This document shows, piece after piece, positions 4,224-34,501 of a stretch of DNA of 64,000 nt (its first letter is position 1; each line of letters begins with the position of its first letter). The stretch lies in the IMG/VR virus record IMGVR_UViG_3300035698_018317, positions 1 to 64,000 of that record; one strand, written 5' to 3'. The position numbers were made by a program, and so were the translations under genes. The notes under the pieces are model-generated. The model made no database searches. It was not told where the DNA came from and was given only the letters and a program-made list of their open reading frames with translations.

Positions 4224-4463
4224 TTATAGTTCTGCCCGTGCTTGTCGTCTATCTTCTAAGTCATCCCAGAGTCCACATTGGGCTAATTCGTTATCTGACA
4301 TTTGAGCGGTTGCTCGTTCTATTTGGGCTTCTAGTCTAGCTACTTTATCTTGGTCATAGTCCATAGCGTTTTCGGCTCTGCTTAGAGTGTCCATCCAGCC
4401 CAGTACTCTTTCTATTCTTTGGGTGGCTTCTTTTAACTTGATATGTTCTAAGAATGATTTCAT
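4224..4463 (-). CDS. Small protein with capsid-targeting-like N-terminus
   Basis: Starts MKSFLEHIKLKEA; ATGA overlap with the upstream gene. Confidence 0.65.
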   Translation of the reverse strand: MKSFLEHIKLKEATQRIERVLGWMDTLSRAENAMDYDQDKVARLEAQIERATAQMSDNELAQCGLWDDLEDRRQARAEL

Positions 4464-4738
4464 TGTTTCCTGATGGATGGGAATTTAGGCATCGGCACAC
4501 CGGGAATCTGTCGTGTTGGTTCAGGTTCAGTATCAATGAGTTCATCGGCGAATTGTTCAACAGCTTGTCCGTATTGTTTATACAAGTTTTGTAATTGTTG
4601 TATTTTCCCTCTGTCATCCAGTTCGACATGTTCCCAGCTATCTTTTATACCTTGAAGTTGTCTTATTATTACATCGAGTAATTTATCTACGCCAAATTCA
4701 CGTTCTTCTTTAAGTTGCCATTCTTTATATGATTTCAT
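4460..4738 (-). CDS. Small protein with capsid-targeting-like N-terminus
   Basis: Starts MKSYKEWQLKEE. Confidence 0.7.
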   Translation of the reverse strand: MKSYKEWQLKEEREFGVDKLLDVIIRQLQGIKDSWEHVELDDRGKIQQLQNLYKQYGQAVEQFADELIDTEPEPTRQIPGVPMPKFPSIRKQ

Positions 4739-4743
4739 AATCG

Positions 4744-4959
4744 TTATTGTAAAACTCTCATCAGGTCGGTTAATTCTCCCACAGTTGCTAACTCTCCTTC
4801 TTCGCCATTAACATTTAAATGGTCTTGATATGCGAACGCTTTGTTAGCTTCATGTACATTAGAAATCATGTATAAAACTGCCATGCGTATCAGATATTTT
4901 TGTCGCTCACGAGTGTCTTCATTTAATTGTACGTTTTTATATTCTTTGAATGATTTCAT
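4744..4959 (-). CDS. Small protein with capsid-targeting-like N-terminus
   Basis: Starts MKSFKEYKNVQLNED; TATATA 5 nt upstream of the ATG. Confidence 0.7.
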   Translation of the reverse strand: MKSFKEYKNVQLNEDTRERQKYLIRMAVLYMISNVHEANKAFAYQDHLNVNGEEGELATVGELTDLMRVLQ

Positions 4960-5406: not shown

Positions 5407-5610
5407 ATGAAATTTGAAGAATTTGTTATTTCTAAAGAAGGCCAACTTAACGAAGGAGATACCTCACAGAGTTATTCCCTTGCAAACAGATTATATATTG
5501 CTTTAGAAGAGGAAGTAGCTCGTTGGGGACCAATGCAACGTTTTGGCCGTGAAATTAGGGCCAATGAAGAACTTTTACAAGCTCTTTCAGCTTGGCGTAA
5601 GATACACTAG
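5407..5610 (+). CDS. Small protein with capsid-targeting-like N-terminus
   Basis: AAAAGGGAGCACC-ATG; starts MKFEEFVISKEGQLNEG. Confidence 0.65.
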   Translation: MKFEEFVISKEGQLNEGDTSQSYSLANRLYIALEEEVARWGPMQRFGREIRANEELLQALSAWRKIH

Positions 5611-13232: not shown

Positions 13233-13265
13233 GTTATTTCCTTTCTTAATTATCATCATGTCAAG

Positions 13266-13294
13266 AATATACAGTATGATAAAATAAAAAGCAA
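13266..13294 (-). promoter_or_regulatory. Sigma70-like promoter for the cascade operon
   Basis: Minus strand TTGCTT-17 nt-TATATT between array 2 and cas8e. Confidence 0.5.
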
Positions 13295-13341
13295 GAGAAA
13301 TCCCATATTGTTTTTATTTGAAAAACATATTTTTTAGAAAC

Positions 13342-13740
13342 TTAACACCCCTACGAATGTAGGGAAAACAAAAAAAAGAAGAAGGAATTTCTCCCACGAT
13401 AAGGGACACCCCTACGTTTGTAGGGAAAACTTCTCTAAAAATTTACGAGCATCAGCAACTAGCGGGACACCCCTACGCATGTAGGGAAAACCAGCCGCAG
13501 AGAGATTCCAGAGCGTTCAGTTAGGGGCACCCCTACGCATGTAGGGAAAACGCTAGGTCAGTTCTTCGGGGCCACGTCGCACGAAAGGAACACCCCTACG
13601 TATGTAGGGAAAACCTTTCTGAGTTGCAGATTCGGTCGTGACAACGTTAGGGACACCCCTACGCATGTAGGGAAAACAAGCAATAGATAAAGCATTGAGC
13701 GAAGCTCAATGAGGGACACCCCTACGCATGTAGGGAAAAC
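13342..13740 (-). CRISPR. CRISPR array 2: 7 repeats, 6 spacers, between cas3 and cas8e
   Basis: Same repeat as array 1. Plus-strand starts at 13342, 13403, 13464, 13524, 13587, 13650 and 13713; spacers 32-35 nt. Confidence 0.97.
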
Positions 13741-13773
13741 TATAACATTTAGTAGTAGAGTAATATGTTGTGT

Positions 13774-16368: not shown

Positions 16369-16685
16369 CACCCACCAATGCCCATGTTGTTCTTGTAAGG
16401 CCATATGATACGGCCAGATTGTAAGATATCCCACACCATTTTTTTCCATACTTTTCTTATATGGATATGAAATTCTTCAGATGTTACTAATTTTTTTTCA
16501 ATAAGTTGGAATCCCAATTCAGAATCATCAACACCCATTCTATTAAGAGCTTCCCACAAATATCCTACTATTTTATCAACTGTTCTATATTTCTTTCTAA
16601 TATCTTTATCATGCATTGCGACTTCTGCATGTTCGAATATTAGTTCGGCTGCTTCGCACACACGTTCTGATAATTCTGTACACAT
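16368..16685 (-). CDS. Small helical protein whose stop overlaps the cas3 start; paralog of 16691-16981
   Basis: Starts MCTELSERVCEAAELIFEH. Confidence 0.75.
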   Translation of the reverse strand: MCTELSERVCEAAELIFEHAEVAMHDKDIRKKYRTVDKIVGYLWEALNRMGVDDSELGFQLIEKKLVTSEEFHIHIRKVWKKMVWDILQSGRIIWPYKNNMGIGG

Positions 16686-19202: not shown

Positions 19203-19901
19203 TTACCTATCATTTTGCATATACTCCCTTGGTACATTCTCGGTTAACCAGACACCGTTTGTAGAAAGGTAGAATACGAATCCATCTGAAGACATTTTAC
19301 CAGAATCCACAGAAATAACAATAGGTTTTCCCCTTCTTTTCCCGACTTGTATTGCTGTGTCCTTATCTACAGACAGATGCACATGATGTCGTTTCATCTT
19401 TTTTAACCCATCATGTTGTATAATATCCCAATTTTTTTGTACGGTGCCATGATATAGCGTATCAGGAGGGGTTTGTGCCTCATAATTCAGATTTATTTTG
19501 ACACTATGGCCTTGAGACGCCCGAATTTGAGATTTATCTTCATTGAATTCGAATCGCTTTTTGTTGTTATGTTCTACAATTTCTTCCAGTTCATCCATAG
19601 AGATGTGGCAACCGGACAAAACTGCTCCTACATCTGCCCAACCTTGTTCATCGAGGGTGAGGTTGATGGTTTCTGGTTTATGCCTAAGAACTAGGCTAAG
19701 AAATTTACTTTGATTTACCATCTGCATCCCTCTTAACGGTGTCAATCCGCCACAGCAATCAATTCTTGGGTCTGGGTTACGGGAGTATTCTTCATTTTCA
19801 CTCCAGCCGCAGCTAAAGCAACCCCAAGGGCCGTGTATCACGCCGACACCTACATCGACCACATCTTGTTCACATTTACAATTACATTCTGGACATTTCA
19901 T
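19203..19901 (-). CDS. kptA: RNA 2'-phosphotransferase KptA/Tpt1 with an N-terminal Cys-rich extension
   Basis: SKFLSLVLRH, RASQGHS, LYHGT, RHHVHLS and NGVWLT; possible internal start at 19721. Confidence 0.92.
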   Translation of the reverse strand: MKCPECNCKCEQDVVDVGVGVIHGPWGCFSCGWSENEEYSRNPDPRIDCCGGLTPLRGMQMVNQSKFLSLVLRHKPETINLTLDEQGWADVGAVLSGCHISMDELEEIVEHNNKKRFEFNEDKSQIRASQGHSVKINLNYEAQTPPDTLYHGTVQKNWDIIQHDGLKKMKRHHVHLSVDKDTAIQVGKRRGKPIVISVDSGKMSSDGFVFYLSTNGVWLTENVPREYMQNDR

Positions 19902-19939: not shown

Positions 19940-20365
19940 TTATTTAAGATATTTTTTGATAAGGTCACTGGAATTTTTTAGAAGAGCGGTTAAACCGAAG
20001 TGTTTTGGAGAAACTTGTTTTAATTCTGCGAGTGTTGCCCACTTAGCTTTATCTGTTTCGAAGTTTAGTTTTGGTTTGAATTCATTTACTAAGCCGATAA
20101 AGTTATGGAATTTAAGGTGTTTATCTTCATAAACATAGGCTGGGAAGAGTTCCATATCGCCTTTAAAGCCTGTTTCTTCCCTAAATTCACGTAGGGCTTC
20201 CTTTTTCATATCACTTGATTCAGCTTTCCCGCCGAAGGATGCCCATGTTCCCGGTTCAGGTCCGTCTTGCCCTCTGAGTCCAACAAGGATTTTTCCCTCC
20301 GGTGAAATAGCTAGTATTCCGGCCCCGGTGATACGATTTATATATTTTTTGAATTCAAGTAGCAC
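19940..20365 (-). CDS. Nudix hydrolase
   Basis: GTWASFGGKAE...ALREFREETG; GTG start. Confidence 0.88.
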   Translation of the reverse strand: MLLEFKKYINRITGAGILAISPEGKILVGLRGQDGPEPGTWASFGGKAESSDMKKEALREFREETGFKGDMELFPAYVYEDKHLKFHNFIGLVNEFKPKLNFETDKAKWATLAELKQVSPKHFGLTALLKNSSDLIKKYLK

Positions 20366-22142: not shown

Positions 22143-22452
22143 TTATTTTCTTCTTCTTCTTCTTTTGTGAATTTTACGAACTCGGATATTTCTACTAATT
22201 TATGTCGCTCAATGATATGCGACCTTAATTTTTTATTATACAATTTAATATGGTAAACATCGAAAGGCTCACCATCTTTATTTTTTCTTCAGTAATTCTG
22301 AATATTTCACCTACGGGATAAGGGTATCCTCTGGGATACGGGAGATTGTTTGTTACACAAACTACTTGTCCAACTTCGTACATTCTTTCTTTTTTGCATC
22401 CTGCCAAAGAAAAAAGAGTGAGAATCAAAATTATTGGTAATATTTTATACAT
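22139..22452 (-). pseudogene. Frameshifted member of the SH3-like lipoprotein array
   Basis: Lipobox LAGC. One extra A in the A6 run at 22281-22286 restores the family C-terminus YHIKLYNKKLRSHII...SEFVK. Confidence 0.7.
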
Positions 22453-22473
22453 TGGTTAGCTCCAATTCGGCAT

Positions 22474-22704
22474 TCATCCTATGATACCATGAGAATACGC
22501 CGCTAACATGGCGGCTTTTTCTTTAATTTCAACTGCCGTTACAGGATTTGGGTCAAAGGCAACGGCTTCTTGTGCTTTCTCGTGCCAATAAGCACGGGTT
22601 GGGTCTTCAAGGCATGACAAGTGTTTGAGAGCGATACTCAAAGCGGTCTCTGGCTCTGAATTCATAGACTCAGAATTAAGTGTATTTGGTTTAAATGGCC
22701 ACAT
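22474..22704 (-). CDS. Unrelated small ORF inserted in the lipoprotein array
   Basis: MWPFKPN..., lacks the family motif. Confidence 0.5.
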   Translation of the reverse strand: MWPFKPNTLNSESMNSEPETALSIALKHLSCLEDPTRAYWHEKAQEAVAFDPNPVTAVEIKEKAAMLAAYSHGIIG

Positions 22705-22709
22705 CTTTT

Positions 22710-23003
22710 TTACCTCGGGTCTGGAATGAGTTGACATAAAACATCTTTTTTATGTCTTATGACTACATGGCCTTTCATTTGGCCGCAGAGAACTTTTATG
22801 TGATAAACAATATCTCTTGTTGAATTATCACATCTTGTGATACGGTGTATTGGGCCTCTCCATTCTTGGTCATCTTTTAAGCAAACAACGTCACCTACTT
22901 GGAAAATCTGTTCTTCATTATTGGATAACTGCTGGTATATTGTGATGCCTATGGCACTAAATACAATGCCAACAATGAGTATAATCACTATTATTTTTCC
23001 CAT
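22710..23003 (-). CDS. SH3-like array member (TM-anchored, no lipobox Cys)
   Basis: FQVGDVVC...GPIHRIT...YHIK...KGHVV...PDPR. Confidence 0.75.
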   Translation of the reverse strand: MGKIIVIILIVGIVFSAIGITIYQQLSNNEEQIFQVGDVVCLKDDQEWRGPIHRITRCDNSTRDIVYHIKVLCGQMKGHVVIRHKKDVLCQLIPDPR

Positions 23004-23004
23004 T

Positions 23005-23283
23005 TTATTTACCCTTTTCTATTTCTATGAATTCACGTATATTACTTAACTGGTTTAGCACGATGACATGCCCTTTTAATTTTGGCTTATACAATTTGAC
23101 ATGATAAGTGAATTTTTTATCGACGTTATGTTCATGTATATCTTTAGTGATTTTGAACACTTCACCAACGGCATAGTCGTCGTCTACGATGCAAACCTTT
23201 TGACCAACTTTGTACATAGGTTCTTGTTTGCATCCTGTCAGAAGAAAAAGGGCTAAAATTAAAATTATGGATGTTTTATACAT
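23005..23283 (-). CDS. SH3-like array lipoprotein
   Basis: Lipobox LTGC; YKVGQKVC; YHVKLY; KGHVIV. Confidence 0.8.
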   Translation of the reverse strand: MYKTSIILILALFLLTGCKQEPMYKVGQKVCIVDDDYAVGEVFKITKDIHEHNVDKKFTYHVKLYKPKLKGHVIVLNQLSNIREFIEIEKGK

Positions 23284-23289
23284 TATATT

Positions 23290-23583
23290 TTACCTTGGGT
23301 CTGGAATGATTTGAAACACTTCATTTGTTTTTTGTCTAAAGACGATATAGCCTTTTCTGTTTTTGTATAAAATTTTCACATGATAAACACAATATGTATC
23401 GGTAAGACCCTTTTCGGTCATTTTTGTACTTTTTGTGACACGAATTATTGGTCCTTGGAGTGTGGGGTTGTCTTTTATACAGACAGTTTCACCTATTGAG
23501 TAAATCTGTTTTTCATCTTTCCCGCATCCAATGACGCAAAACAAGAGAACAAGTATAATCCATATTTTATTCATTTTGTTCAC
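23290..23583 (-). CDS. SH3-like array lipoprotein
   Basis: Lipobox VIGC; YSIGETVC; YHVK; KGYIV; PDPR. Confidence 0.8.
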   Translation of the reverse strand: MNKMNKIWIILVLLFCVIGCGKDEKQIYSIGETVCIKDNPTLQGPIIRVTKSTKMTEKGLTDTYCVYHVKILYKNRKGYIVFRQKTNEVFQIIPDPR

Positions 23584-23855
23584 CTTGGGTCTTCTGAGAA
23601 TTTGTTTATTTCACTTGCCCTTTTTTCATAAATCACACTTCCACCTAAATCCTTTTTGTGAACCGAAACGTAATAAATGAACATTATACGATTGTTACTG
23701 GGGTTGGTTGCTTGTTCTACCTTGTCTATCGTTCCAACCATACTTCCATCTATGATACAGACCTTTTCGCCGACTACGAACTTTTTCTTTTCATCTTTGC
23801 ACCCCACAATACAGAGGGCACAAAGTAGAAGGGGTATAAATAGTAGCTTTTTCAT
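23580..23855 (-). CDS. SH3-like array lipoprotein
   Basis: Lipobox IVGC; FVVGEKVC; EDPR. Confidence 0.8.
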   Translation of the reverse strand: MKKLLFIPLLLCALCIVGCKDEKKKFVVGEKVCIIDGSMVGTIDKVEQATNPSNNRIMFIYYVSVHKKDLGGSVIYEKRASEINKFSEDPR

Positions 23856-23857
23856 AA

Positions 23858-24124
23858 TTATCTTTCTTGTGCTATGAATTCGAATACATCTTCTTCTATC
23901 ATTCTGTATACAGCGTATCCTTTTTCGGGTACTAAAACCTTTACATGGAAGATGCTATATGGGCCTTTTACAATAATGCGTTGGATAGTTCCTACTTCTC
24001 CGGTTCGCAAAACCACTTTATCTCCCTCTTTGAAAATTGCTTCTTTTTTTTTGCAATCTGGGTTATGCCCACATCCCATGAAGAAGCAACAAAGCATCAA
24101 AATGACAATTAGTTTTTTTGGCAT
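23858..24124 (-). CDS. SH3-like array lipoprotein
   Basis: Lipobox FMGC; FKEGDKV; FHVK; VFEF. Confidence 0.8.
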   Translation of the reverse strand: MPKKLIVILMLCCFFMGCGHNPDCKKKEAIFKEGDKVVLRTGEVGTIQRIIVKGPYSIFHVKVLVPEKGYAVYRMIEEDVFEFIAQER

Positions 24125-24131
24125 AGCATCC

Positions 24132-24425
24132 TTATCTTTCTTGTTCTATGAATTCGAGTATATTTTCTTCTGCCATTCGGTGAACAACATATCCTTTTTC
24201 TGTTTTGCTGAAAATTTTTACATGGTAGCTGTAGATGGGTGCATTACAGCCGCCTTTACCTTTCTTTGATACACGATGGATAGTTCCTGTGTCTCCTGTA
24301 ACCCGCAGAGACACTTTATCTCCCACTTTGAAAATTGCTTTATTGTTGCTTGCGCAATTATCGCTATGTTCACATCCCATGAAGAAGCAACAAAGCATCA
24401 GAATGACAATTAGTTTTTTTGGCAT
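24132..24425 (-). CDS. SH3-like array lipoprotein
   Basis: Signal peptide identical in amino acids to that of 23858-24124; FKVGDKV; YHVK; ILEFIEQER. Confidence 0.8.
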   Translation of the reverse strand: MPKKLIVILMLCCFFMGCEHSDNCASNNKAIFKVGDKVSLRVTGDTGTIHRVSKKGKGGCNAPIYSYHVKIFSKTEKGYVVHRMAEENILEFIEQER

Positions 24426-24434
24426 AGATAATCC

Positions 24435-24770
24435 TTATCTTGGTTGTTCTACAAATTCGAATACGTTTGATTCGGGAACTCTGTGTACAACATGTCCTTT
24501 TAAATCTTCATTAAAAACCTTTATATGATAAAGGCTATCTGGACCTTTTGTTATACGAAGAATAGTTCCTATAATATTAGGTCGCATAACAACTTTGTCT
24601 CCGACTTTTAAAATCCCAACTTGTAAAACATATTCTTCTTTAGCCTCTTTAGCTGTCTCAGGAGTATTTGTAGTATCTGTAGTAGTATCTGTAGCTGCAC
24701 ATCCTATTATTAGAGCACAAAGCAATGCCGTCAACATCGGTACAAACATAATATCAATCAGTTTTGACAT
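24435..24770 (-). CDS. SH3-like array lipoprotein
   Basis: Lipobox IIGC; Thr-rich linker; LKVGDKV; YHIK; KGHVV; VFEFVEQPR. Confidence 0.8.
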   Translation of the reverse strand: MSKLIDIMFVPMLTALLCALIIGCAATDTTTDTTNTPETAKEAKEEYVLQVGILKVGDKVVMRPNIIGTILRITKGPDSLYHIKVFNEDLKGHVVHRVPESNVFEFVEQPR

Positions 24771-24778
24771 AGGTTATC

Positions 24779-25078
24779 CTACTTTGGATTTTCGATGAAT
24801 TCTAATATGTCTTTTTCTTTTATTTTGTATACGATATGGCCTTTTTTCTTTTCATCGTAAACTTTTACAGAATACACATATGAAGGCCACGTTTCTGTGA
24901 CCTTACAGATAACTCCAACTATGGTTGGTTTTTCTATGATAACTCGTGCTATGGAAGTGGGTTTATAAATAACCACTTTTTCTCCAACCTTGTAAATGGC
25001 TGGCGTGGACTCAAGAGCATCGCCACATCCTACTATGAAGCAACAAAGCATGAGAATAGAAATCAGTTTTTTTGACAT
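24779..25078 (-). CDS. SH3-like array lipoprotein
   Basis: Lipobox IVGC; YKVGEKV; YSVK; KGHIV; ILEFIENPK. Confidence 0.8.
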   Translation of the reverse strand: MSKKLISILMLCCFIVGCGDALESTPAIYKVGEKVVIYKPTSIARVIIEKPTIVGVICKVTETWPSYVYSVKVYDEKKKGHIVYKIKEKDILEFIENPK

Positions 25079-26224: not shown

Positions 26225-26288
26225 ATTTTATTTCTTTTGTTGGTGGACTCGCAGGCACCGGACTATATAATTGTATAAGGATTATACC

Positions 26289-27164
26289 ATGAATGAATTT
26301 ACAAAACAATGCCCATCTTGCGGAAAATTAATTAATTGCAAAACAAAATATTACTTAAAAGAGTCAAAAAGAAAAAATAGGAATTGCCAATCATGTGCAG
26401 CAAAAGAAAGAATAAAAAAATACGGAAACAATGATAGTTTTAATAAAATATCAAAAAAAGGAGCACAATCCGGCGAGCTAAACCCATTTTATGGAAAAAA
26501 ACATTCTGACGACGCTAGAAAAAAAATAAGTGAAAATACCAACCGAGAATGGATGAATACAGCAGAATATAAAGCAAAGGTGTCTAAGCAATGTTCTGGT
26601 AAGGGCAATCCAATGTATGGAAAAATATGTTATCAAATTTGGTTGGAAAAATATGGCAAAGAAGAAGCAGATAGACGTAAAGAAGCAAGAAGACAGAAAG
26701 CTTCCAAAAGTCTTTCTGGAGCTAATAATCCGATGTACGGCAAACCATCACCACAGGGGTCAGGTAATGGTTGGAATGGATGGTATAAAGATTGGTTTTT
26801 CAGAAGTTTGTTAGAATTGTCCTATGTTGTAAATGTATTGGAAAAACAAAATAAAAAATGGGTAAGTGCTGAATATATTAAAATACCATATGAATCATAT
26901 GATGGACATCAAAGGACTTACCGACCAGATTTTTTAGTCGATAGTCATTTGCTTATAGAAATTAAGCCCGCTAAACTTGTTAATACACGTTTGGTGCAAA
27001 TTAAAAAACAAGCGGCTATCCAATATGCAAAACAAAAAGACATGGATTATCAAATTATATCACCACAAATGATATCTAAGTCTAATTTGATACAATTGCA
27101 TCAGGATGGACAATTTAAATTTACTGAAAAATATGAAGAGAAGTTCATTCAATATTATAGATAA
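26289..27164 (+). mobile_element. Free-standing putative homing endonuclease (Zn finger + NUMOD3 repeats + TnsA-like PD-(D/E)xK domain)
   Basis: CPSC..CQSC, NPFYGKKHS, NPMYGK twice, YRPDF..IEIKP. Confidence 0.75.
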
Positions 27165-27786: not shown

Positions 27787-28092
27787 CTATTTTAAGAATT
27801 TTTTTTCGTAAGCTCTGTATATTTTGCTGTACTCTTTACCCCATATTGTACCATGAAATTCGTCTTCTTTTTCCCATGCTTTTGCATGACCCATTTCATG
27901 TAATAATGTATCTATTGCTGCCTCTTCAGATAGCATCTTATTAATTCTTATGAGATATTTGCCCTTTATCAGTTCACAATCCCCACAATAATCATCTGGC
28001 ATTTTTACTCGACGCACCCTAATGGGATGGTCAAATAAACAATGACTTCTTAGATATTTCGAAATTCTGTAATATCTGTCGTACTCACTCAT
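27787..28092 (-). CDS. Small HExxH metallopeptidase (SprT/ImmA-like)
   Basis: TLLHEMGHA...HG..W. Confidence 0.7.
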   Translation of the reverse strand: MSEYDRYYRISKYLRSHCLFDHPIRVRRVKMPDDYCGDCELIKGKYLIRINKMLSEEAAIDTLLHEMGHAKAWEKEDEFHGTIWGKEYSKIYRAYEKKFLK

Positions 28093-28762: not shown

Positions 28763-29524
28763 TTAACGTTTGTTACGCCAAACGGAGTCTAGGGTAACAG
28801 GCATATGTACGATATTTGCTTCTGCACCGGGATAAGGCGGATAAACTTGATGGATGATAAATTGTTTTGTTTTTCCGGCTTTGAGTAATTCTCGTGCCAC
28901 ATTTTTAAACGCCTCAATGTGGTCTTTTCTATCATCCCATATTTCAATGATATCAAATCCTTTGTAATTTGCTACAAGTGTATTGACAACATATGTTTTA
29001 TGAGCAAGCGTATTGGAATCAGGTTTTTCTGTGCCTTTTTTCGATGTTCTTGTAGGATAACCTTTTTCGGTCATAAAGTCTCCCGTATAGTACTCTTGAT
29101 GAGAATTGGGAGACTTTTCTTCTGGGTGAACCATATCTTCTTTTGAGTCAACGGCTGATTGGAATTTTTCCCGAGATTTTTCATTGGCAGAACCAATGAC
29201 TCTTCGGCCATACAATTCTTGTTGTCTTAGGACGTTTCTAACGTGGGCAGAAGCAACGCCTCTTCTCCCGGTAAGAAGAATAGCTACAGTATTAGGGTCG
29301 TTCTTTGCTTCTTTAAAAGCATCAACCACTTCTTGATTTACGCTTCCATCATAGAATGGTGCCGTAAGGGAGTCTTTACTTCCCCACCAATCTTTACCGC
29401 TCCATCCGTGTTGAGGGTCATCTGTTTTTGGTCTTTCTGGTACATTAGCAATTGTACCATCAAAGTCGAAAACAGATAGACGACGAGTAGGAGCTTCTTC
29501 CACATATTGTCGAAATTCGCCCAT
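28763..29524 (-). CDS. HAD phosphatase, Swiss-Army-Knife RNA-repair-like family
   Basis: VFDFDGT, DPNTVAILLTGR and IEIWDDRKDH. Confidence 0.75.
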   Translation of the reverse strand: MGEFRQYVEEAPTRRLSVFDFDGTIANVPERPKTDDPQHGWSGKDWWGSKDSLTAPFYDGSVNQEVVDAFKEAKNDPNTVAILLTGRRGVASAHVRNVLRQQELYGRRVIGSANEKSREKFQSAVDSKEDMVHPEEKSPNSHQEYYTGDFMTEKGYPTRTSKKGTEKPDSNTLAHKTYVVNTLVANYKGFDIIEIWDDRKDHIEAFKNVARELLKAGKTKQFIIHQVYPPYPGAEANIVHMPVTLDSVWRNKR

Positions 29525-29539
29525 TCTTTCATTCCTAGC

Positions 29540-31096
29540 TTACTTTAACGTTTTTTTGAATGCTTCAGCTTCTAAGCCACTGATGATTTCACCACGTTGA
29601 TGCGGTGGTACTTTACCAGAACCATTGCACTCTTCGCAACCCATTCCGTTACATTTTTTACAGGTATCTCCACCTGATGCTTCTATATCACCCCATTTTA
29701 CTGAGGGTTGATGACCTGCGAAGGCTTTAACTCGTTTTGCCCACCAGCCACCTCTACGGTTTCTTTTGGTGCCGGGAGCGTTGAACATTTCTACCCAATC
29801 TCTAATTTGTTGGGCTGATAAACCAGTTCCTTGTTTTCCTTTAAAGAACTGACTAACTTGGTTGGGTTGGAAATTCTTTAATTTAAGCAGAAACAGGACG
29901 GCTCGACGTTCTTCTATTTGCCAACCAGTCGCTTTTGATTCTTTCCCAACTTGTCGCAGGGAGCTTAATGTTTCAGCTACTTTTTCAATAGGATTATACC
30001 TAAGAAGCCAAGCAAGAGCCAGAGGTTTATCATTTTTATCAGAAAATTCTGCTGGAACTCCTTTAGCTTGAGCAAAATTGACTCCGGGGAATATAACCGG
30101 AAGTAATTTTGTCCTATCATAAATAGTAAGATATTTCTTTGAATCTATGTCTGGGTCTAATAGACCTTTCAAAAATTCATCTCTGATTCTTTCAAGAGAG
30201 ATACGTTCTGGGAGATTCATGAAATTTGGAATTGCCTTGGCAATTTCCGGGTCAAGTTTATCTCCTTGTCCAAATCGGCATTGGAATCGGATTGCTCTCA
30301 TAATACGAACAGGGTCTTCCTCAAATCTTTCTTGAGCTTTTCCAACTGTTTTTACCTTACCATGTTTCAAGTCATGAAGACCTCTTCCAGTTGGGTCATA
30401 TAACTTTTTATTTTCTCCATCTGCTTTAGTCAATTCAATATAAAGAGCATTAATTGTCAAATCTCTTCTACTGGCATCTTCCTTCGGATTATCCACAAAA
30501 TCAACTTCTGATTGGCCATTTTCTGTACCTTGGCCGACCTTTGCATCTTTACGGAAGGTTGCGATTTCAAATTCTTCTTTTTCTACCACAGCGCTAATAA
30601 CAAAGACTTTTTTCTCTTCACTATTATCTCTTCCTTTTATGAACCAAAGTTTTGTATCACCCTTTTGGGCATCTTCTATTTTTCTTGTTTGTCCATCTTC
30701 ATCATAGAATTTTGAAGGAAGGTTTAGTTCATCTCCTTCTTTTCCGCTTTTATCACCAGTTCTTTTGAATCCGGCTGATGCGAGGATGGTTGCCACTTGA
30801 GCGGGAGTAGCATTGGTGGCTAAATCATAATCTTTAACAGTTTTACCTTTGATGAAGTCACGCACGGGACCACCTACCAAGTAAAGTGTTTTCTTGGGCA
30901 TGGCTACGTCTTTACCGCTGGTATCTTTTTGAAGTACGATGCTTCCGCTATTCAGAAACGCTCTAACTATTGGGCGTAATTTTTGTGGAGGTATAAATCC
31001 TTTGTCAAGAGGGGCCGCAGCAGATTCGGCTTTCCAATCTTTGCTACCTTTTTCCTCTTTCAACATCACGTATTTTTTAAAGCTTCTTGTATTCAT
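29540..31096 (-). CDS. Class II tRNA nucleotidyltransferase (CCA-adding/poly(A) polymerase family)
   Basis: LVGGPVRD..KDYDLAT, EIATFR, RRDLTINA, EDPVRIMRAIRF and SLERIRDE; C-terminal CxxC..CxxC. Confidence 0.9.
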   Translation of the reverse strand: MNTRSFKKYVMLKEEKGSKDWKAESAAAPLDKGFIPPQKLRPIVRAFLNSGSIVLQKDTSGKDVAMPKKTLYLVGGPVRDFIKGKTVKDYDLATNATPAQVATILASAGFKRTGDKSGKEGDELNLPSKFYDEDGQTRKIEDAQKGDTKLWFIKGRDNSEEKKVFVISAVVEKEEFEIATFRKDAKVGQGTENGQSEVDFVDNPKEDASRRDLTINALYIELTKADGENKKLYDPTGRGLHDLKHGKVKTVGKAQERFEEDPVRIMRAIRFQCRFGQGDKLDPEIAKAIPNFMNLPERISLERIRDEFLKGLLDPDIDSKKYLTIYDRTKLLPVIFPGVNFAQAKGVPAEFSDKNDKPLALAWLLRYNPIEKVAETLSSLRQVGKESKATGWQIEERRAVLFLLKLKNFQPNQVSQFFKGKQGTGLSAQQIRDWVEMFNAPGTKRNRRGGWWAKRVKAFAGHQPSVKWGDIEASGGDTCKKCNGMGCEECNGSGKVPPHQRGEIISGLEAEAFKKTLK

Positions 31097-31097
31097 T

Positions 31098-31655
31098 TTA
31101 TTGTTGACCTTTTAACATGGCAGTCATTCTTTCAGGATGCGTTTTCGATATTCTCACTACATAGACTTCTTTACCGTCTTGTGTCGTCCATGATTGTAGT
31201 ACCTTTCCTAATTCTGACAAGTTCCCATTTTGAATTTCTTTTTGGACTCTATCATCTGAGATAGCAGCCTTTACCGCTTGTGTTTTTCTCTTTTTAGCAT
31301 ATTCTGTCGGAGAAAGTAGTCCTTTATCTCCTGAAGGGTCCATTTGAATCTCTATTTCTAAATCATTTGCGCCCATTTCATATTTATTTACATCCATGCC
31401 TGTGAAGCCCATAAATGGTTCTGCACCAGAATCTTTCATGGTATCTAGCATTCTATTTCTGAAAGCACTACCGATTCCTGTTGTGGCTTGAGTAGTCCAT
31501 TTTCCTAAAGTAGAATGTCCTTTTTGAGATAAATAATCTCCGACTCCTCTTGGCATATCCATTGCGGGTTGTGAATACCTCATTTGCCGAACTTGTCTGG
31601 TTCCCGGCAAATTACCTTGTAACTCTTGAAGTTGTAACCACTCTTTAAATTTCAT
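31098..31655 (-). CDS. Hypothetical protein with capsid-targeting-like N-terminus
   Basis: Starts MKFKEWLQLQE. Confidence 0.7.
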   Translation of the reverse strand: MKFKEWLQLQELQGNLPGTRQVRQMRYSQPAMDMPRGVGDYLSQKGHSTLGKWTTQATTGIGSAFRNRMLDTMKDSGAEPFMGFTGMDVNKYEMGANDLEIEIQMDPSGDKGLLSPTEYAKKRKTQAVKAAISDDRVQKEIQNGNLSELGKVLQSWTTQDGKEVYVVRISKTHPERMTAMLKGQQ

Positions 31656-31663
31656 ATCTTTTC

Positions 31664-32158
31664 CTATAACGGAGCTTGTAGTCCTAATCTAAATAGGAGA
31701 TACGCAGCCAAAAGTACCCAAACAATTTGTATTACAAATCCAAATGCTGATTTCCATCTTCCTTCATTTTGTTGTGATTGGCCTTGAAGTTCTTGAATAT
31801 TAGCAGCGTTTTGGTGACTTCTTTCATCTGATGCTTGAATAATAGGGATATTAGTATCACATTTATTCTGAAGCGATTCTAAATGAAGGTTCGTATCATG
31901 TACTCTGTCAAATAGTTTTCCTATGTCTCTTTTATATGAGTCAGGACTGGTTGCTTCTACCACAGAAAGTCTCGCAGACATTTTACTAATAGAGTCACTC
32001 ATGTTTTCTATTTTTTTATCTGTTTCATCTTGCTTTTTCATGACAACTTGAACTCGTTCGTCAATCCTAGTGGAAAGTTCGAATAAGTTCTTTATTGACT
32101 CGGAAACTTGCAAAAAATATTGTTCGCCGACTGTCGTGTTGTTCACTGAATCTCCCAT
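31664..32158 (-). CDS. Coiled-coil protein with C-terminal TM segment
   Basis: Heptad-like body followed by AFGFVIQIVWVLLAAYLLF. Confidence 0.65.
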   Translation of the reverse strand: MGDSVNNTTVGEQYFLQVSESIKNLFELSTRIDERVQVVMKKQDETDKKIENMSDSISKMSARLSVVEATSPDSYKRDIGKLFDRVHDTNLHLESLQNKCDTNIPIIQASDERSHQNAANIQELQGQSQQNEGRWKSAFGFVIQIVWVLLAAYLLFRLGLQAPL

Positions 32159-32208: not shown

Positions 32209-32673
32209 ATGGAAGCCAAAGAAAAAGAAAAGCTTGAGATAGAAGAATTACCTGAGAATATGAAAGACATGATTCCATCTATAAACGTGGGTGAAATTCA
32301 AAAAAAAGAAGAAGAAGAACCATTAATAACTGATGATGTCCTCCTAACTATGTATGCGGAGATTGCGAATAACATTCGAGGAGACCGTGGTGAAATAGAC
32401 AATATTTTAAATAATTTCGTAGATATGGTGTTTAATGAAGGAGACTCAACTACTTCAAGTAAAGAAGCAGTAGTCAACCTTATCAAGTTGAGGTCTGAAC
32501 AATCTGATAAGATGACAAAAGTTGCAGATTTAATGACAAGAATAAAATTAAAAGAAAGAGATACTTTTCCACGTTATATGGCAGCTTCTCAAAATAATAC
32601 CATAAATATAGGTGGAGATAGAAGAGCGTTGTTAGAAGCGATTACAAAAGCAAAAAGTGCCCAAAAGGATTAA
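32209..32673 (+). CDS. Hypothetical protein, possibly T4 gp16-like small terminase
   Basis: Helical core and a C-terminal QNNTINIGG motif reminiscent of T4-type small terminases; weak similarity. Confidence 0.35.
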   Translation: MEAKEKEKLEIEELPENMKDMIPSINVGEIQKKEEEEPLITDDVLLTMYAEIANNIRGDRGEIDNILNNFVDMVFNEGDSTTSSKEAVVNLIKLRSEQSDKMTKVADLMTRIKLKERDTFPRYMAASQNNTINIGGDRRALLEAITKAKSAQKD

Positions 32674-32674
32674 T

Positions 32675-33973
32675 ATGAGTAATAGACATAATTTGGATGA
32701 TTGGTTGGTAGAGGCTGACACACCCGCTGCGTCGGGACAACCAGACCCGATGGGTATGACCCCATCTAGTGACCCTGCGGATATATCGCAGGACATGAGT
32801 GACCCTAATGTTGCAAATATGCAGCAGCAAAATGCTCCTTCGGAAGACCCAAACAATCCAGAGGATGTGAATCAAGACCCAATAGCACCGGATATGCCAG
32901 AACCACAAAACGAAGTAACAGATTTCGAAGTGTGGAAAAATGAATATCTGAAAGAGTCCATCATAGGAAATGCAAATGAACTGATGGACTTGTTGAACCA
33001 AGTACGTGACAAAGAAAATCTTAAACCTTATCAAAGAAAATTTGTTGAAGACAATGTAAATATCCAATTGGTCCGATTGAATTCTAATGTGGATAAAGCA
33101 TCTAAAGAAATACGAAGACAAATAAAACAACAGTTAGATAAAAACAATCCGGCTACGTCAGTAGTCAACCATGTAACATCAGTATTAGAGACAATGCCTG
33201 AATTGAACAGCATTTTCATCAAGTTATGTGGATACACAGGTCAAAAAGGTGATTTGCATAGAAAGTTTATCGCTGGTTTACTGGGTGGAGTTCAAGTTGG
33301 AAGTGGTGGAAATAATGAAGATATTATTTACAATGAAAAAGAATATTCAATATTGTTTTCCACTCGTTTCAATTCCAGATGGGGTGATGTCATGTTAGGC
33401 TCTTGGAGTTTAAGAAGTGATGACGCCGAAAGATATTTGGAAGAACCTGAATTAAAAAGATTACAAGAAGGAAGCCCAGAAGAAAAAGATGCGTTAAGAA
33501 GAAGAATCGTTATTGATTCAATAGCTCAACTTTTTGAAACAAGAGCTTTTTATATCAACGTAGTAGCAGATGATGGAACTCTCTTCACTCTTGGGTGGGA
33601 TATAGCTAACTCTTTGAGAAATGCGTTTGTAGAAGGAAAATTAGTTGTAAAAACAAGACAATCTGGTGACTCAGAAGCAATGATAGATGACCAAGGTAAA
33701 ATTATTCCTTTAATGGACATCAGTATTGCTTACGTAAAAGAGACGGGTCAACAGGATGAAGAAGGAAAGCCGGAAACTGAGGAAGTTGAATTTATAGACA
33801 GAAAAGACGGAATGCTTTTCTTAACTGCTGATTTGAAACTTATTCGAGAGGCATCCGTTGCTCTACAAGGTACATCATTTAAAGAAACACCTTATACGGG
33901 AAACCCCTCAGATTTAATGACGTTAAAACGATGTGTCTATTCTGCTCATGATTTGCTGATGAGGCAATGCTAA
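32675..33973 (+). CDS. Hypothetical protein, probably virion-associated
   Basis: Acidic, Pro/Gln-rich N-terminus starting MSNRHNLDDWLVEA; head of the structural region. Confidence 0.7.
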   Translation: MSNRHNLDDWLVEADTPAASGQPDPMGMTPSSDPADISQDMSDPNVANMQQQNAPSEDPNNPEDVNQDPIAPDMPEPQNEVTDFEVWKNEYLKESIIGNANELMDLLNQVRDKENLKPYQRKFVEDNVNIQLVRLNSNVDKASKEIRRQIKQQLDKNNPATSVVNHVTSVLETMPELNSIFIKLCGYTGQKGDLHRKFIAGLLGGVQVGSGGNNEDIIYNEKEYSILFSTRFNSRWGDVMLGSWSLRSDDAERYLEEPELKRLQEGSPEEKDALRRRIVIDSIAQLFETRAFYINVVADDGTLFTLGWDIANSLRNAFVEGKLVVKTRQSGDSEAMIDDQGKIIPLMDISIAYVKETGQQDEEGKPETEEVEFIDRKDGMLFLTADLKLIREASVALQGTSFKETPYTGNPSDLMTLKRCVYSAHDLLMRQC

Positions 33974-33982: not shown

Positions 33983-34501
33983 ATGCAAAAATTTACAGAC
34001 TTTGTTGGCAAAAAAGAACGAGATGCTAGAAAACAACTCGGAATTATAAAGAAAATTCTTGAAAAGAATGATTATCAGGTCTCTGATTTTCTTGAAGAAA
34101 TAGGAGACCCTTACATATTCGTTAAGGCACCAAATACAAATGAAGAATTGTCATTTGAAGGCATTAGAATATACAAAATAGGAAGTGATATAGCATACAG
34201 AGTTCAAAACGAAGAAAAAACTCAGCCTTATGGAAAAGCTTATTCTATTGCTGTAGAAGAAATGTATGACGACTTTATTTCTGATAAGTTTAAAGAAGAA
34301 AAAGCTGGTCAAGAAGTAATGGAATCCGTATTTAAGGAAATAGAAAGATTTTTTACACAAAGTTTGATTGCTGAAAAGCAACTTCGTTCCGCAGAAATAG
34401 AAAAAAATAGGGACCAACTGGGCAGAGTCATCATAGGTGGAAGTGGCACAGGAACCGATTATAGCAACCTGATATCTAAAACAAGTGTTGGTAGCAACTA
34501 G
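33983..34501 (+). CDS. Hypothetical protein
   Basis: AAAGGAA SD; starts MQKFTDFV. Confidence 0.7.
   Translation: MQKFTDFVGKKERDARKQLGIIKKILEKNDYQVSDFLEEIGDPYIFVKAPNTNEELSFEGIRIYKIGSDIAYRVQNEEKTQPYGKAYSIAVEEMYDDFISDKFKEEKAGQEVMESVFKEIERFFTQSLIAEKQLRSAEIEKNRDQLGRVIIGGSGTGTDYSNLISKTSVGSN

What the first reader, a model, noticed from the sequence alone, without database searches (positions are those of the whole stretch)
28763..31655. Candidate virion-injected tRNA/RNA repair kit
Seen: three adjacent co-oriented genes, all with capsid-targeting-like N-termini: an unknown protein, a class II nucleotidyltransferase with intact DxD/RRD/EDxxR motifs, and an RNA-repair-type HAD phosphatase. Known: HAD enzymes can heal 3'-phosphate ends, CCA enzymes rebuild tRNA 3' ends, and several toxins and antiphage systems attack tRNAs. 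Inference: the phage pre-packages enzymes that restore tRNA ends on entry, before any translation is needed. I do not know this as a described system.
Basis: partly seen in the sequence, partly recalled or inferred. Interest (0 to 1): 0.8.

Follow-up and report, generated by a model that had tools for sequence, protein, structure and literature searches.

The report
Leader-tagged tRNA-end repair genes, jumbo phage
Three neighbouring genes of an uncultivated jumbo phage (an unknown protein, a CCA-type tRNA nucleotidyltransferase and an RNA-repair-type phosphatase) all start with a short leader that closely matches the peptide phage T4 uses to load proteins into its capsid, so these enzymes may be carried in the virion and injected with the DNA, though this has not been shown.

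Summary
Window 28763-31655 (- strand) holds three adjacent genes. P1 (185 aa) is a fast-evolving unknown. P2 (518 aa) is a class II CCA-type nucleotidyltransferase with intact GGxVRD/DxD, RRD and EDxxR motifs. P3 (253 aa) is an HAD_SAK_1 phosphatase with an intact DxDxT.

All three begin with M-x(0-4)-F-[KR]-x-[WYF]-[LV], followed by [LV]-x-E at residues 10-14. This leader is not chance:
- It is kept in 112 of 119 P2 homologues, most P3 homologues and 21 of 23 P1 relatives.
- It marks about 8% of ORFs in this phage clade, against 0.4% in other phages that carry CCA genes.
- It is encoded by varying codons.
- It matches the T4 capsid targeting sequences, read here from T4 ipI, ipII and ipIII.

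Relatives carry a T4-type portal, gp21-like prohead protease and gp23-like capsid protein. Elsewhere in the clade the same leader sits on an RNA ligase, a 2H/Acb1-like esterase, an exonuclease and a sigma-like protein.

CCA enzymes and SAK-HAD phosphatases in jumbo phages were already described as RNA repair. The capsid-targeting-like leader on them was not found in the literature. Packaging, injection and tRNA specificity are inferred. The window's own head genes were not seen.

The parts
31098..31655 (-). P1: a 185-aa fast-evolving protein of unknown function. It has an N-terminal leader, a disordered first half and a small alpha/beta C-terminal domain.
   Evidence: No Pfam, PHROG or NCBIfam hit. 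Only 19 representatives turned up among 1.8 billion proteins. In the family alignment the invariant residues are the leader's F2, K3 and W5 plus G76; leader L6 is nearly invariant. The AF2 model has pLDDT 59.5, below 50 for residues 14-94. Foldseek found no meaningful match.
31623..31655 (-). P1 leader MKFKEWLQLQE (residues 1-11), ending in L-Q-E
   Evidence: 21 of 23 family members carry the leader, and all 21 have [LIVMFA]-x-E with the E at positions 10-18, most often 11.
29540..31096 (-). P2: a class II (CCA-type) tRNA nucleotidyltransferase of 518 aa, with a leader, a clade-specific N-terminal domain and a C-terminal zinc-finger-like motif
   Evidence: PF01743 plus PF12627; phrog_2244. The best NCBIfam hit is CCA tRNA nucleotidyltransferase, below its equivalog cut-off. 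The AF2 model has pLDDT 91.5. The top Foldseek PDB hits are full-length CCA-adding enzymes 4x4w, 1miv, 3h38 and 5hc9.
31052..31096 (-). P2 leader MNTRSFKKYVMLKEE (residues 1-15), ending in L-K-E
   Evidence: 112 of 119 homologues are tagged, and 109 have [LIVMFA]-x-E with the E at positions 8-19, mostly 12-14. The leader is followed by a variable low-complexity linker. pLDDT is 57/53 for residues 1-20, with a helix at 5-15.
30347..30907 (-). P2 nucleotidyltransferase head (residues ~64-250) carrying GGPVRD, DYD and RRD. The EDPVR motif follows at residues 259-263.
   Evidence: Invariant columns in alignment A3; Pfam match.
29615..29662 (-). P2 C-terminal CxxCxGxG-CxxCxGxG motif (residues 479-494), which looks like a DnaJ-type zinc finger
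   Evidence: Read from the translation. It is present in most homologues and replaced by another C-terminus in one subgroup. The resemblance to DnaJ is from memory and was not tested.
28763..29524 (-). P3: a stand-alone HAD_SAK_1 ('Swiss army knife' RNA-repair type) phosphatase of 253 aa, with no kinase domain
   Evidence: PF10307 at 60.2 bits. phrog_415, polynucleotide kinase family, matches the phosphatase part. HAD motifs I-IV are invariant or nearly so. No solved relative was found by sequence.
29495..29524 (-). P3 leader MGEFRQYVEE (residues 1-10), ending in V-E-E, eight residues before the DxDxT strand
   Evidence: 28 of 42 homologues match the strict leader pattern; a few clearly lack it.
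31664..32158 (-). A conserved untagged upstream partner: a 164-aa coiled-coil protein with a hydrophobic C-terminus. It always precedes the P1/CCA genes.
   Evidence: Found at the same position in L003, L004, L005 and L008. 21% identity to the LR756511.1 counterpart, E 8e-13.
33983..34501 (+). A leader-bearing 172-aa protein (MQKFTDFVGKKE) inside the divergent structural module, next to the gp2-like gene
   Evidence: Tagged in every relative: MHTFTEFV, MKNFKDFL, MLEFKEFI. 45% identity to LR756511.1.
19940..20365 (-). A leader-like Nudix hydrolase (MLLEFKKYINR, GTG start)
   Evidence: NUDIX 7e-10.
4224..4959 (-). Three consecutive small leader-bearing ORFs of 79, 92 and 71 aa: MKSFLEHIKLKE, MKSYKEWQLKEE and MKSFKEYKNVQLNE
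   Evidence: The two that were scanned have no Pfam hit.
5407..5610 (+). A small leader-bearing ORF (MKFEEFVISKEG)
27787..28092 (-). A SprT-like 101-aa protein, a conserved untagged neighbour of the CCA/HAD genes
   Evidence: PF10263. Homologues sit next to the HAD gene in L003 and L008. 42% identity.

Best explanation
The window is the first 64 kb of a 225-kb uncultivated jumbo myophage, from a large clade with a T4-type head and baseplate.

P2 is a class II tRNA nucleotidyltransferase of the CCA-adding type. P3 is a stand-alone HAD 3'-end phosphatase of the RNA-repair ('SAK') family. P1 is a fast-evolving accessory protein.

All three carry a 10-15-residue N-terminal leader, with clade consensus M-K-[ST]-F-K-E-[WFY]-[LVI]-x-x-[KR]-E. 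I propose that this leader works like the T4 capsid targeting sequence:
1. It docks the newly made protein onto the scaffolding core of the prohead.
2. The gp21-like prohead protease removes it after [LIV]-x-E.
3. The mature enzyme stays in the DNA-filled head and enters the cell with the genome.

Once inside, the phosphatase would clear blocking 3'- (or 2',3'-cyclic) phosphates. The nucleotidyltransferase would then rebuild trimmed or cleaved tRNA 3'-CCA tails. Translation capacity would be restored before any phage gene is expressed.

What is shown: the gene identities; intact catalytic motifs; the reality, conservation and clade-specificity of the leader; its match to the T4 CTS; and a T4-type protease in relatives.

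What is inferred: capsid targeting, cleavage, injection, tRNA specificity, and cooperation between P2 and P3.
For: Enzymes:
- Family, motif and fold evidence for P2 and P3.

The leader is a selected peptide:
- It is kept across 47-85%-identical P2 homologues while the linker behind it varies in length and composition.
- It is the only invariant part of the P1 family apart from G76.
- It is an ordered motif, not a composition effect: 29 observed against 1.8 in shuffles.
- Its codons vary, and it persists in loci of GC 0.3-0.6.

Clade specificity:
- It marks 7.9% of clade ORFs against 0.4% of ORFs in loci of other phages with CCA genes. In those phages the match to P2 starts only around residues 36-70, so P2's N-terminal region is not matched.

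Match to T4:
- ipII and ipIII read MKTYQEFIAE|A, and ipI reads MKTFKEF...ITE|A, all taken from NC_000866.
- The same pattern picks ipII and ipIII out of 158 T4 ORFs.
- In T4, 10-20-residue N-terminal CTS propeptides direct IPs and Alt into the core and are cut by gp21 (PMC5694885, PMC3012670).

T4-type head in relatives:
- LR756511.1 shares the whole structural-module synteny with the window (25-60% identity over 20+ proteins). It has a portal, a gp21-like protease (E 3e-21) and a gp23-like MCP (E 8e-31).
- 73 gp21-like proteases were found in clade head loci.
- Four contigs carry both the tagged CCA gene and this MCP.

Repertoire of tagged proteins:
- Besides the CCA enzyme and the HAD, it includes an RNA ligase, a 2H/Acb1-like esterase, a DEDD exonuclease, a sigma-70-like protein, a borderline ArdC-N-like protein (below Pfam's cut-off), a Nudix hydrolase and many tiny fast-evolving ORFs. 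Several sit beside head genes. No core replication enzyme was among the tagged proteins that were scanned.

Context:
- tRNA 3'-tail cleavage is a real immune strategy (Cas12a3) whose viral counter-measure is said to be unknown (PMC12851939).
Against: - There are no virion proteomics for any member, because the clade is uncultivated.
- The window contig's own head genes were not retrieved.
- Expression timing is unknown. The T4 late-promoter motif is not enriched, and no shared promoter motif was found.
- The leader marks about 8% of ORFs, a large cargo list. It includes a sigma-like protein and an AAA ATPase that need not be virion proteins.
- Some HAD homologues lack the leader.
- An untagged RNA-repair enzyme, Tpt1/KptA, sits in the same window, so repair is not uniformly tagged.
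- The HAD is linked to the CCA gene in 17 of 28 related loci scored.
- P2 scores below every NCBIfam equivalog cut-off, and sequence cannot separate CCA-adding from A-adding or poly(A) polymerase activity.
- RuvC-type tail cleavage leaves a 3'-OH, so the phosphatase is not needed against every tRNA tail nuclease.
Confidence: 0.5

Rival explanations
1. The leader is real but is not a capsid-loading signal. It might bind another phage factor, such as a chaperone, a membrane or compartment anchor, a regulated-proteolysis adaptor or an assembly platform. P2 and P3 would then be ordinary cytoplasmic RNA-repair enzymes made after infection, like T4 PseT and RnlA.
For: - Jumbo-phage CCA enzymes and SAK-HADs are already read as cytoplasmic RNA repair (PMC7824862).
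- Leader-bearing proteins include a sigma-like factor, an AAA ATPase and a Nudix hydrolase.
- About 8% of ORFs carry the leader.
- There is no timing or proteomic evidence.
Against: - The leader's closest known counterpart, by both sequence and position, is the T4 CTS.
- The clade has the T4-type scaffold and protease context.
- The leader typically ends in a gp21-type [LIV]-x-E at residues 10-14.
- Tagged ORFs cluster beside head and structural genes.
- One tagged protein is conserved inside the structural module.
Confidence: 0.27
2. P2 is not a tRNA CCA repair enzyme. It is instead a poly(A) polymerase or A-adding enzyme that tails host or phage RNAs, for decay or host shut-off. P3 would prepare 3'-OH ends for it.
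For: - The NCBIfam pcnB model scores 118.7 bits, close to the 134.1 bits of the best CCA model, and both are below their cut-offs.
- PAP (3aqk-3aqm) and A-adding enzymes (1vfg, 4wc2) are also among the fold hits.
- From my own knowledge, the catalytic cores of PAP and CCA enzymes share these motifs.
Against: - The best sequence and fold matches are bona fide CCA-adding enzymes, aligned over head, neck, body and tail.
- The neighbourhood and the tagged repertoire are RNA-repair flavoured: HAD, RNA ligase, 2H, Tpt1.
Confidence: 0.12
3. The shared N-termini are a by-product of AT-rich start-proximal codon preferences or of translation-initiation signals, and have no peptide function.
For: The leader is rich in K, F and E, encoded by AAA, TTT and GAA. 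Such codons are common after start codons in AT-rich genomes.
Against: - Shuffling the same N-terminal residues gives 1.8 matches against 29 observed.
- Synonymous codons vary and track genome GC; L is encoded by all six codons, and the leader persists at GC 0.5-0.6.
- Substitutions are conservative at the peptide level (F/Y/W, L/V/I, K/R).
- The motif is nearly absent (0.4%) from the comparison set of other phage loci that carry untagged CCA genes.
Confidence: 0.03

Closest known systems
Phage T4 internal proteins IPI/IPII/IPIII and Alt (capsid targeting sequence, gp21 processing, co-injection)
   Same: - A 10-20-residue N-terminal leader of the same sequence type: T4 has MKT[YF][QK]EF, this clade has MK[ST]FKE[WFY][LVI].
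- The leader ends in [LIV]-x-E.
- In fast-evolving cargo families, the leader is essentially the only conserved part.
- Cargo genes sit near structural genes.
- A gp21-type protease and a gp23-type capsid occur in the clade.
   Different: - The cargo here includes large RNA-end-repair enzymes, not small restriction inhibitors or an ADP-ribosyltransferase.
- The tagged repertoire is far larger, at about 8% of ORFs.
- Nothing has been shown biochemically.
- The phages are uncultivated jumbo or huge phages, only distantly related to T4 (MCP about 31% identical).
Jumbo-phage RNA repair gene sets (Iyer et al. 2021, PMC7824862; Burroughs & Aravind 2016, not held in the library)
   Same: A CCA-adding enzyme and a stand-alone 'Swiss-army-knife' HAD phosphatase in jumbo phages, read as restoration of damaged tRNA ends.
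   Different: That work describes them as phage-encoded cytoplasmic repair. A text search of the paper for 'packaged' and 'virion-packaged' found no link between these enzymes and the virion. No shared N-terminal leader was looked for or seen in the passages read.
T4 PseT (Pnkp) plus RnlA tRNA anticodon-loop repair
   Same: A phage HAD-type 3'-phosphatase heals RNA ends so that a second enzyme can restore a tRNA damaged by host defence.
   Different: - P3 has no kinase domain.
- None of the window ORFs scanned is an RNA ligase.
- The partner enzyme is an end-adding nucleotidyltransferase, so the predicted target is the 3' tail and not the anticodon loop.
- As far as I know, the T4 enzymes carry no CTS; this was not checked here.
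phiKZ / SPN3US ejection (inner-body) proteins and the injected anti-defence protein Tad1
   Same: Jumbo phages package dozens of non-structural proteins that are processed by a gp21-related protease and ejected. One of them, Tad1, is an anti-defence protein (PMC13282480, PMC5694885).
   Different: Those propeptides are mostly longer than 100 residues, with [ASG]-x-E sites and no short shared leader. No RNA-repair enzyme is reported among them.

Membership tests
Class II (CCA-adding type) tRNA nucleotidyltransferase | Motif A: GGxVRD followed by the DxD metal carboxylates | tested here: met
   GGPVRD at residues 74-79 and D88-Y-D90. These are invariant or nearly invariant in 65 homologues.
Class II (CCA-adding type) tRNA nucleotidyltransferase | Motif B (RRD) and motif D (EDxxR), the nucleotide-selecting residues | tested here: met
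   R209 is nearly invariant; R210, D211, E259, D260 and R263 are invariant.
Class II (CCA-adding type) tRNA nucleotidyltransferase | A full head-neck-body-tail architecture able to hold a tRNA | tested here: met
   The AF2 model has pLDDT 91.5. Foldseek aligns 460-520 columns to 4x4w, 1miv, 3h38, 5hc9 and 8cbm.
Class II (CCA-adding type) tRNA nucleotidyltransferase | A score above a curated equivalog threshold, which would separate CCA-adding from PcnB or A-adding enzymes | tested here: not met
   The best hit is NF009814 at 134 bits against a cut-off of 290. pcnB TIGR01942 scores 118.7 against 305.65. The protein is a divergent member, and its sub-specificity is unresolved.
Class II (CCA-adding type) tRNA nucleotidyltransferase | Template-independent addition of C, C and A to tRNA 3' ends | not testable with these tools
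   This needs an enzyme assay.
HAD_SAK_1 RNA-repair phosphatase (PF10307) | A profile match above the gathering score | tested here: met
   60.2 bits against 25.6.
HAD_SAK_1 RNA-repair phosphatase (PF10307) | HAD motifs I (DxDxT), II (T/S), III (K) and IV (acidic pair) | tested here: met
   D19, D21, T23, T84, K175 and D197 are invariant across 34 sequences, and D200 is nearly invariant.
HAD_SAK_1 RNA-repair phosphatase (PF10307) | Phosphatase activity on RNA 3'-phosphate ends | not testable with these tools
   This is predicted only from family annotation and the similarity to the Pnk phosphatase part (phrog_415). No solved relative was found by sequence.
T4-type CTS-directed internal (ejected) head protein | An N-terminal 10-20-residue leader of the MKT[YF][QK]EF type | tested here: met
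   The P1, P2 and P3 N-termini were compared with T4 ipI, ipII and ipIII read from NC_000866. The pattern recovers ipII and ipIII in T4.
T4-type CTS-directed internal (ejected) head protein | The leader ends at a gp21-type [LIV]-x-E cleavage site | tested here: met
   LQE-11 in P1, LKE-14 in P2 and VEE-10 in P3. Family-wide, the E lies mostly at positions 10-14. Cleavage itself was not tested.
T4-type CTS-directed internal (ejected) head protein | A gp21-type prohead protease and scaffold encoded by the same phage | tested here: inconclusive
   Both are present in LR756511.1 and in 73 clade head loci. The MCP lies on the same contig as a tagged CCA gene in four cases. The window contig's own head region could not be fetched.
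T4-type CTS-directed internal (ejected) head protein | The protein is found, processed, in the mature virion and enters the host | not testable with these tools
   There is no cultured member. The literature search found no virion proteome listing such enzymes for this clade.
T4 Pnkp/Rnl-type healing-and-sealing pathway | A polynucleotide 5'-kinase domain and an RNA ligase partner | tested here: not met
   P3 is HAD only. None of the window ORFs scanned is an RNA ligase. A tagged RNA ligase does occur about 4 kb from the CCA gene in relative L099.

The most novel reading that the evidence does not exclude
A widespread clade of uncultivated jumbo and huge phages uses a T4-like capsid targeting leader as a modular 'address label'. 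With it the phages load a large, fast-turning-over arsenal (about 8% of their genes) into the capsid. That arsenal includes a tRNA 3'-end repair kit: a CCA-adding enzyme, a 3'-phosphatase and, in some members, an RNA ligase and a 2H esterase. The phage would then arrive with translation-independent, pre-made counter-measures against tRNA-tail-directed immunity, such as Cas12a3-like nucleases or 3'-end-modifying toxins.
Probability: 0.35. Interest if true: 0.85.

Novelty: new variant of a known kind. Interest (0 to 1): 0.72.

Why it matters
If the leader is a capsid-loading signal, it allows the injected proteome of a large uncultivated phage clade to be read straight from sequence.

It would also show that RNA-repair enzymes can be delivered ready-made. 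That would solve a chicken-and-egg problem: a phage cannot translate a repair enzyme in a cell whose tRNAs are already disabled.

It would offer a candidate answer to an open question raised in 2026, namely how viruses resist immunity that clips the universal tRNA CCA tail.

On the practical side, a short transferable leader with a known T4 counterpart could be tested directly in the T4 protein-packaging system.

Even if packaging proves wrong, the leader remains unexplained. It is a strongly conserved N-terminal signal on about 8% of ORFs.

Tried and rejected
- DNA search of the three genes against deposited phages: no match.
- tRNA and Rfam scans of the window: nothing found.
- T4 late promoter TATAAATA: not enriched. 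An 8-mer enrichment in upstream regions gave only A-rich words. Expression timing therefore stays unknown.
- Walking beyond the window end: the next genes are Toprim and PDDEXK, not head genes.
- Fetching the window contig's capsid region: one profile scan and two degenerate-DNA scans all filled up with other members of the very abundant clade, and the contig was not among them.
- P1 function: the sensitive profile search found only clade relatives. The AF2 model was poor, and the BFVD fold search gave nothing.
- P3 against solved structures by profile: no true hit.
- The Burroughs & Aravind 2016 paper that defined the SAK HAD families is not held in the library.
- I considered and rejected the idea that the motif is compositional or a codon artefact.


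Full report
WHAT IS THERE

The window is positions 1-64000 of IMG/VR contig IMGVR_UViG_3300035698_018317, a 225,284-bp phage contig. On the - strand lie three tightly packed genes at exactly the coordinates given:
- P1, 31098-31655, 185 aa
- P2, 29540-31096, 518 aa
- P3, 28763-29524, 253 aa

Upstream of them sits a 164-aa coiled-coil protein with a hydrophobic C-terminus (31664-32158).

The genes diverge from a + strand structural module that starts near 32176. That module includes a gp2-like DNA end protector, a 1503-aa protein, and gp5-, gp25- and gp6-like baseplate proteins.

An Hsp20 gene and a SprT-like gene lie downstream.

THE ENZYMES

P2:
- It matches the class II nucleotidyltransferase head and RNA-binding domains (PF01743 8.7e-27, PF12627) and PHROG 2244, tRNA nucleotidyltransferase.
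- In an alignment of 65 homologues, GGxVRD, DxD, RRD and EDxxR are invariant or nearly so.
- An AlphaFold2 model has pLDDT 91.5. It aligns over 460-520 columns to full-length CCA-adding enzymes: human mitochondrial 4x4w and 8cbm, Bacillus 1miv, Thermotoga 3h38 and 5hc9.
- The best NCBIfam model is a CCA tRNA nucleotidyltransferase. All models, including PcnB, score below their equivalog cut-offs. The CCA-adding reading is therefore the best guess, but A-adding or poly(A) activity is not excluded.
- P2 has three additions that ordinary CCA enzymes lack: a leader, a conserved N-terminal domain (residues ~20-65), and a C-terminal CxxCxGxG x2 motif.

P3:
- It is a stand-alone HAD phosphatase of the 'Swiss army knife' RNA-repair family (PF10307, 60.2 bits against 25.6).
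- All four HAD motifs are conserved.
- It has no kinase domain.

P1:
- It has no family hit.
- Its relatives are confined to this phage clade: 19 representatives among 1.8 billion proteins.
- It is half disordered in the model.

THE LEADER IS REAL

The three N-termini are MKFKEWLQLQE, MNTRSFKKYVMLKEE and MGEFRQYVEE. They share F-[KR]-x-[WY]-[LV], and then [LV]-x-E at residues 10-14.

Conservation in the three families:
- Among 119 P2 homologues (47-85% identical, on contigs up to 572 kb), 112 keep the leader. Of those, 109 follow it with [LIVMFA]-x-E, with the E mostly at positions 12-14.
- Behind the P2 leader comes a linker of variable length and low complexity, and only then the conserved enzyme. 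In the model, residues 1-20 form a detached low-confidence helix.
- Most P3 homologues carry the leader about 10-15 residues before the DxDxT motif. A few do not.
- In the P1 family the invariant columns are leader residues F, K and W plus one glycine, and leader L6 is nearly invariant.

Spread beyond the three genes:
- In three syntenic loci from other assemblies, about 7 of 25 genes each start this way.
- Across all clade loci fetched, 220 of 2777 distinct ORFs do. The consensus is M-K-[ST]-F-K-E-[WFY]-[LVI]-x-x-[KR]-E.

Controls:
- Shuffling residues within the same N-termini gives 1.8 matches against 29 observed.
- Loci of other phages that carry untagged CCA genes give 3 of 720 ORFs.
- Codons at leader positions vary and track genome GC between 0.3 and 0.6. 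Selection therefore acts on the peptide, not on the RNA.

The window itself holds at least nine further or related cases, among them:
- three consecutive small ORFs at 4224-4959
- 5407-5610
- the Nudix gene at 19940-20365
- the 172-aa protein at 33983-34501 inside the structural module

RESEMBLANCE TO THE T4 CAPSID TARGETING SEQUENCE

I read the T4 internal-protein genes from NC_000866:
- ipII and ipIII begin MKTYQEFIAE, followed by A.
- ipI begins MKTFKEF and runs on to ...ITE, followed by A.

These are the same kind of peptide as the clade leaders MKSFKEFISEK and MKTFHEFLIEK. The search pattern built on the clade picks ipII and ipIII out of 158 T4 ORFs, with two spurious hits.

According to the literature, T4 internal proteins and Alt join the scaffolding core through such 10-20-residue N-terminal CTS propeptides. 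gp21 removes the propeptides, for example at ITE-6 in Alt, and the proteins are ejected with the DNA. The CTS can also carry foreign proteins into heads (PMC5694885, PMC3012670).

THE CLADE HAS A T4-TYPE HEAD

The deposited 595-kb uncultured phage LR756511.1 shares the whole arrangement around the CCA gene. More than 20 window structural proteins are 25-60% identical to its proteins, in the same order.

It encodes:
- a portal (E 3e-32 against T4 gp20)
- a gp21-like prohead protease (E 3e-21)
- a scaffold-like protein
- a gp23-like capsid protein (E 8e-31)
- two large leader-bearing proteins directly after these

The capsid protein is 73-92% conserved across 80 IMG/VR loci. 73 gp21-like proteases were found next to it. 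Small tagged ORFs crowd around these head genes, for example about nine in L066.

Four contigs carry both this capsid gene and a tagged CCA gene.

The window contig's own head region could not be reached. For this phage the protease is therefore inferred from kinship.

WHAT ELSE CARRIES THE LEADER

I scanned 50 tagged proteins that are not CCA or HAD enzymes; the 50 include the window's P1 and the 172-aa structural-module protein. Among them were:
- an RNA ligase (PF09414, 8e-34), about 4 kb from a tagged CCA gene
- a 2H/Acb1-like phosphoesterase
- a DEDD (RNase T type) exonuclease
- a sigma-70-like protein
- an ArdC-N-like protein (borderline)
- a Nudix hydrolase
- a methyltransferase
- an AAA ATPase (its tag is doubtful)

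Most of the rest have no known domain. This looks like a set of RNA-repair, counter-defence and take-over functions rather than replication or tail proteins. That fits an ejected arsenal but does not prove one.

LINKAGE

The CCA gene keeps its position, after the coiled-coil gene and divergent from the structural module, in all relatives examined. In the census of related loci:
- Apart from the window's own locus, a CCA ORF was identified in 28 of the 36 related loci. It carried the leader in all but two, and in those two the true start was unclear.
- An HAD homologue lay within 10 kb in 17 of the 28 (3 nt to 3.1 kb away, usually on the same strand and usually tagged).
- A tagged P1-type gene preceded the CCA gene only in the closer relatives. 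It is absent from the LR756511.1-like group.

The unit is therefore a conserved tagged CCA gene with variable tagged companions, not a fixed three-gene operon.

MECHANISM PROPOSED

Shown:
- the enzyme identities and intact motifs
- a conserved, clade-specific, peptide-level leader of T4-CTS type ending in [LIV]-x-E
- a T4-type protease, scaffold and capsid in relatives

Inferred:
1. The leader docks P1, P2 and P3 onto the prohead core.
2. The protease trims it. This would leave P2 starting about 5 residues, and P3 about 8 residues, before their folded parts.
3. The proteins ride in the head and enter with the DNA.
4. P3 removes 3'-terminal phosphates, and P2 rebuilds CCA tails.

The rationale is that tRNA damage blocks the very translation needed to make a repair enzyme. 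Immunity that clips tRNA CCA tails now has a documented example, Cas12a3, and its authors state that viral counter-measures are unknown (PMC12851939).

WHAT IS KNOWN AND WHAT IS NEW

Iyer et al. 2021 already list CCA-adding enzymes and stand-alone SAK-HAD phosphatases among jumbo-phage RNA-repair functions (PMC7824862). The 'repair kit' in itself is therefore not new.

CTS-directed packaging is classic T4 biology. Jumbo phages of the phiKZ/SPN3US type are known to eject many proteins, including the anti-defence protein Tad1 (PMC13282480).

My full-text searches found no report of RNA-repair enzymes in virions, and none of a CTS-type leader in uncultivated jumbo or huge phages. I therefore rate the finding a new variant of known kinds.

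CAVEATS
- There are no proteomics, no expression timing and no biochemistry.
- The tagged set is large and heterogeneous.
- Some HAD homologues lack the leader, and a Tpt1/KptA RNA 2'-phosphotransferase in the same window is untagged.
- The gene calls used for the census were crude: longest ORFs, thinned greedily.
- The leader pattern was defined on this clade. The comparison with T4 is therefore a consistency check, not an independent discovery.

Noticed in passing
window 8322-16449: The phage carries a type I-E CRISPR-Cas interference module on the - strand: Cas3 (13774-16449), Cse1 (11808-13259), Cse2 (11285-11815), Cas7 (10167-11267), Cas5 (9542-10228) and Cas6e (8976-9545). Next to it, at 8322-8913, is an array of at least 9 repeats with core GGGACACCCCTACGCATGTAGGGAAAAC and spacing 60-64. 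No cas1 or cas2 lies next to it.
   Followed up: partly
window 1-2800: This stretch has unusually high GC (0.48 against about 0.36 elsewhere), a strong A-over-T skew and only short ORFs. It is studded with a repeated 25-63-nt element, ATTAAGTTATTARTTAGCATGTACA, whose core is TGTACATGAT. Eleven of the 20 window matches fall here, against about 6 expected for the whole window. It may be a promoter or terminal-region element.
   Followed up: partly
window 19203-19901 (-): An untagged Tpt1/KptA RNA 2'-phosphotransferase (PF01885, 2.6e-52) with a zinc-ribbon-like N-terminus, directly downstream of the leader-like Nudix gene at 19940-20365. This is a second RNA-repair-type function in the window.
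   Followed up: no
window 22225-25078 (-): A tandem run of about seven small paralogues of roughly 90 aa. Each has a signal peptide and lipobox (L..GC) followed by a conserved Y-x-VG-x-x-VC motif. The one scanned has no Pfam hit.
   Followed up: no
window 32657-33973 (+) and its homologues in L003, L004, L005, L008: The conserved 438-aa protein of the structural module starts with a leader-like variant, N-L-[ED]-D-W-L-x-E, followed by a proline- and glycine-rich stretch. In one relative (L107) it matches the leader pattern outright.
   Followed up: partly
L099:15659-16318 (-); L027:14620-15156 (+); L124:15668-17254 (+); L064:4386-5861 (+); L114:15806-17500 (+): Leader-bearing proteins in related phages: an RNA ligase (PF09414, 8e-34), a 2H/Acb1-like esterase, a sigma-70-like protein, an RNase T-type exonuclease and a borderline ArdC-N-like protein.
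   Followed up: partly
L011:6908-10135 (-) and L011:10504-12048 (-) (LR756511.1): Two large proteins lie directly downstream of the capsid gene. One, of 1076 aa, starts with the leader (MEFREWFRSAE). The other, of 514 aa, contains DFKEWYFINE just after a possible GTG start.
   Followed up: no
MCP genes of L011 and L014-L093: The capsid protein's own N-terminus, NAKFLNEA, is invariant in 66 clade members. It ends in L-N-E-A, a leader- or cleavage-like motif.
   Followed up: no
protein P0173: A 2922-aa protein contains 14 repeats that match positions 41-99 of the P1 family profile. That is the G/A/S-rich region that the P1 model shows as disordered.
   Followed up: no
window 26271-27164 (+): An endonuclease-like ORF (phrog_15427) with an N-terminal CxxC...CxxC sits between the Dda-like helicase gene and the CCA/HAD neighbourhood. 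L003 has a LAGLIDADG homing endonuclease inserted inside the conserved structural module.
   Followed up: no
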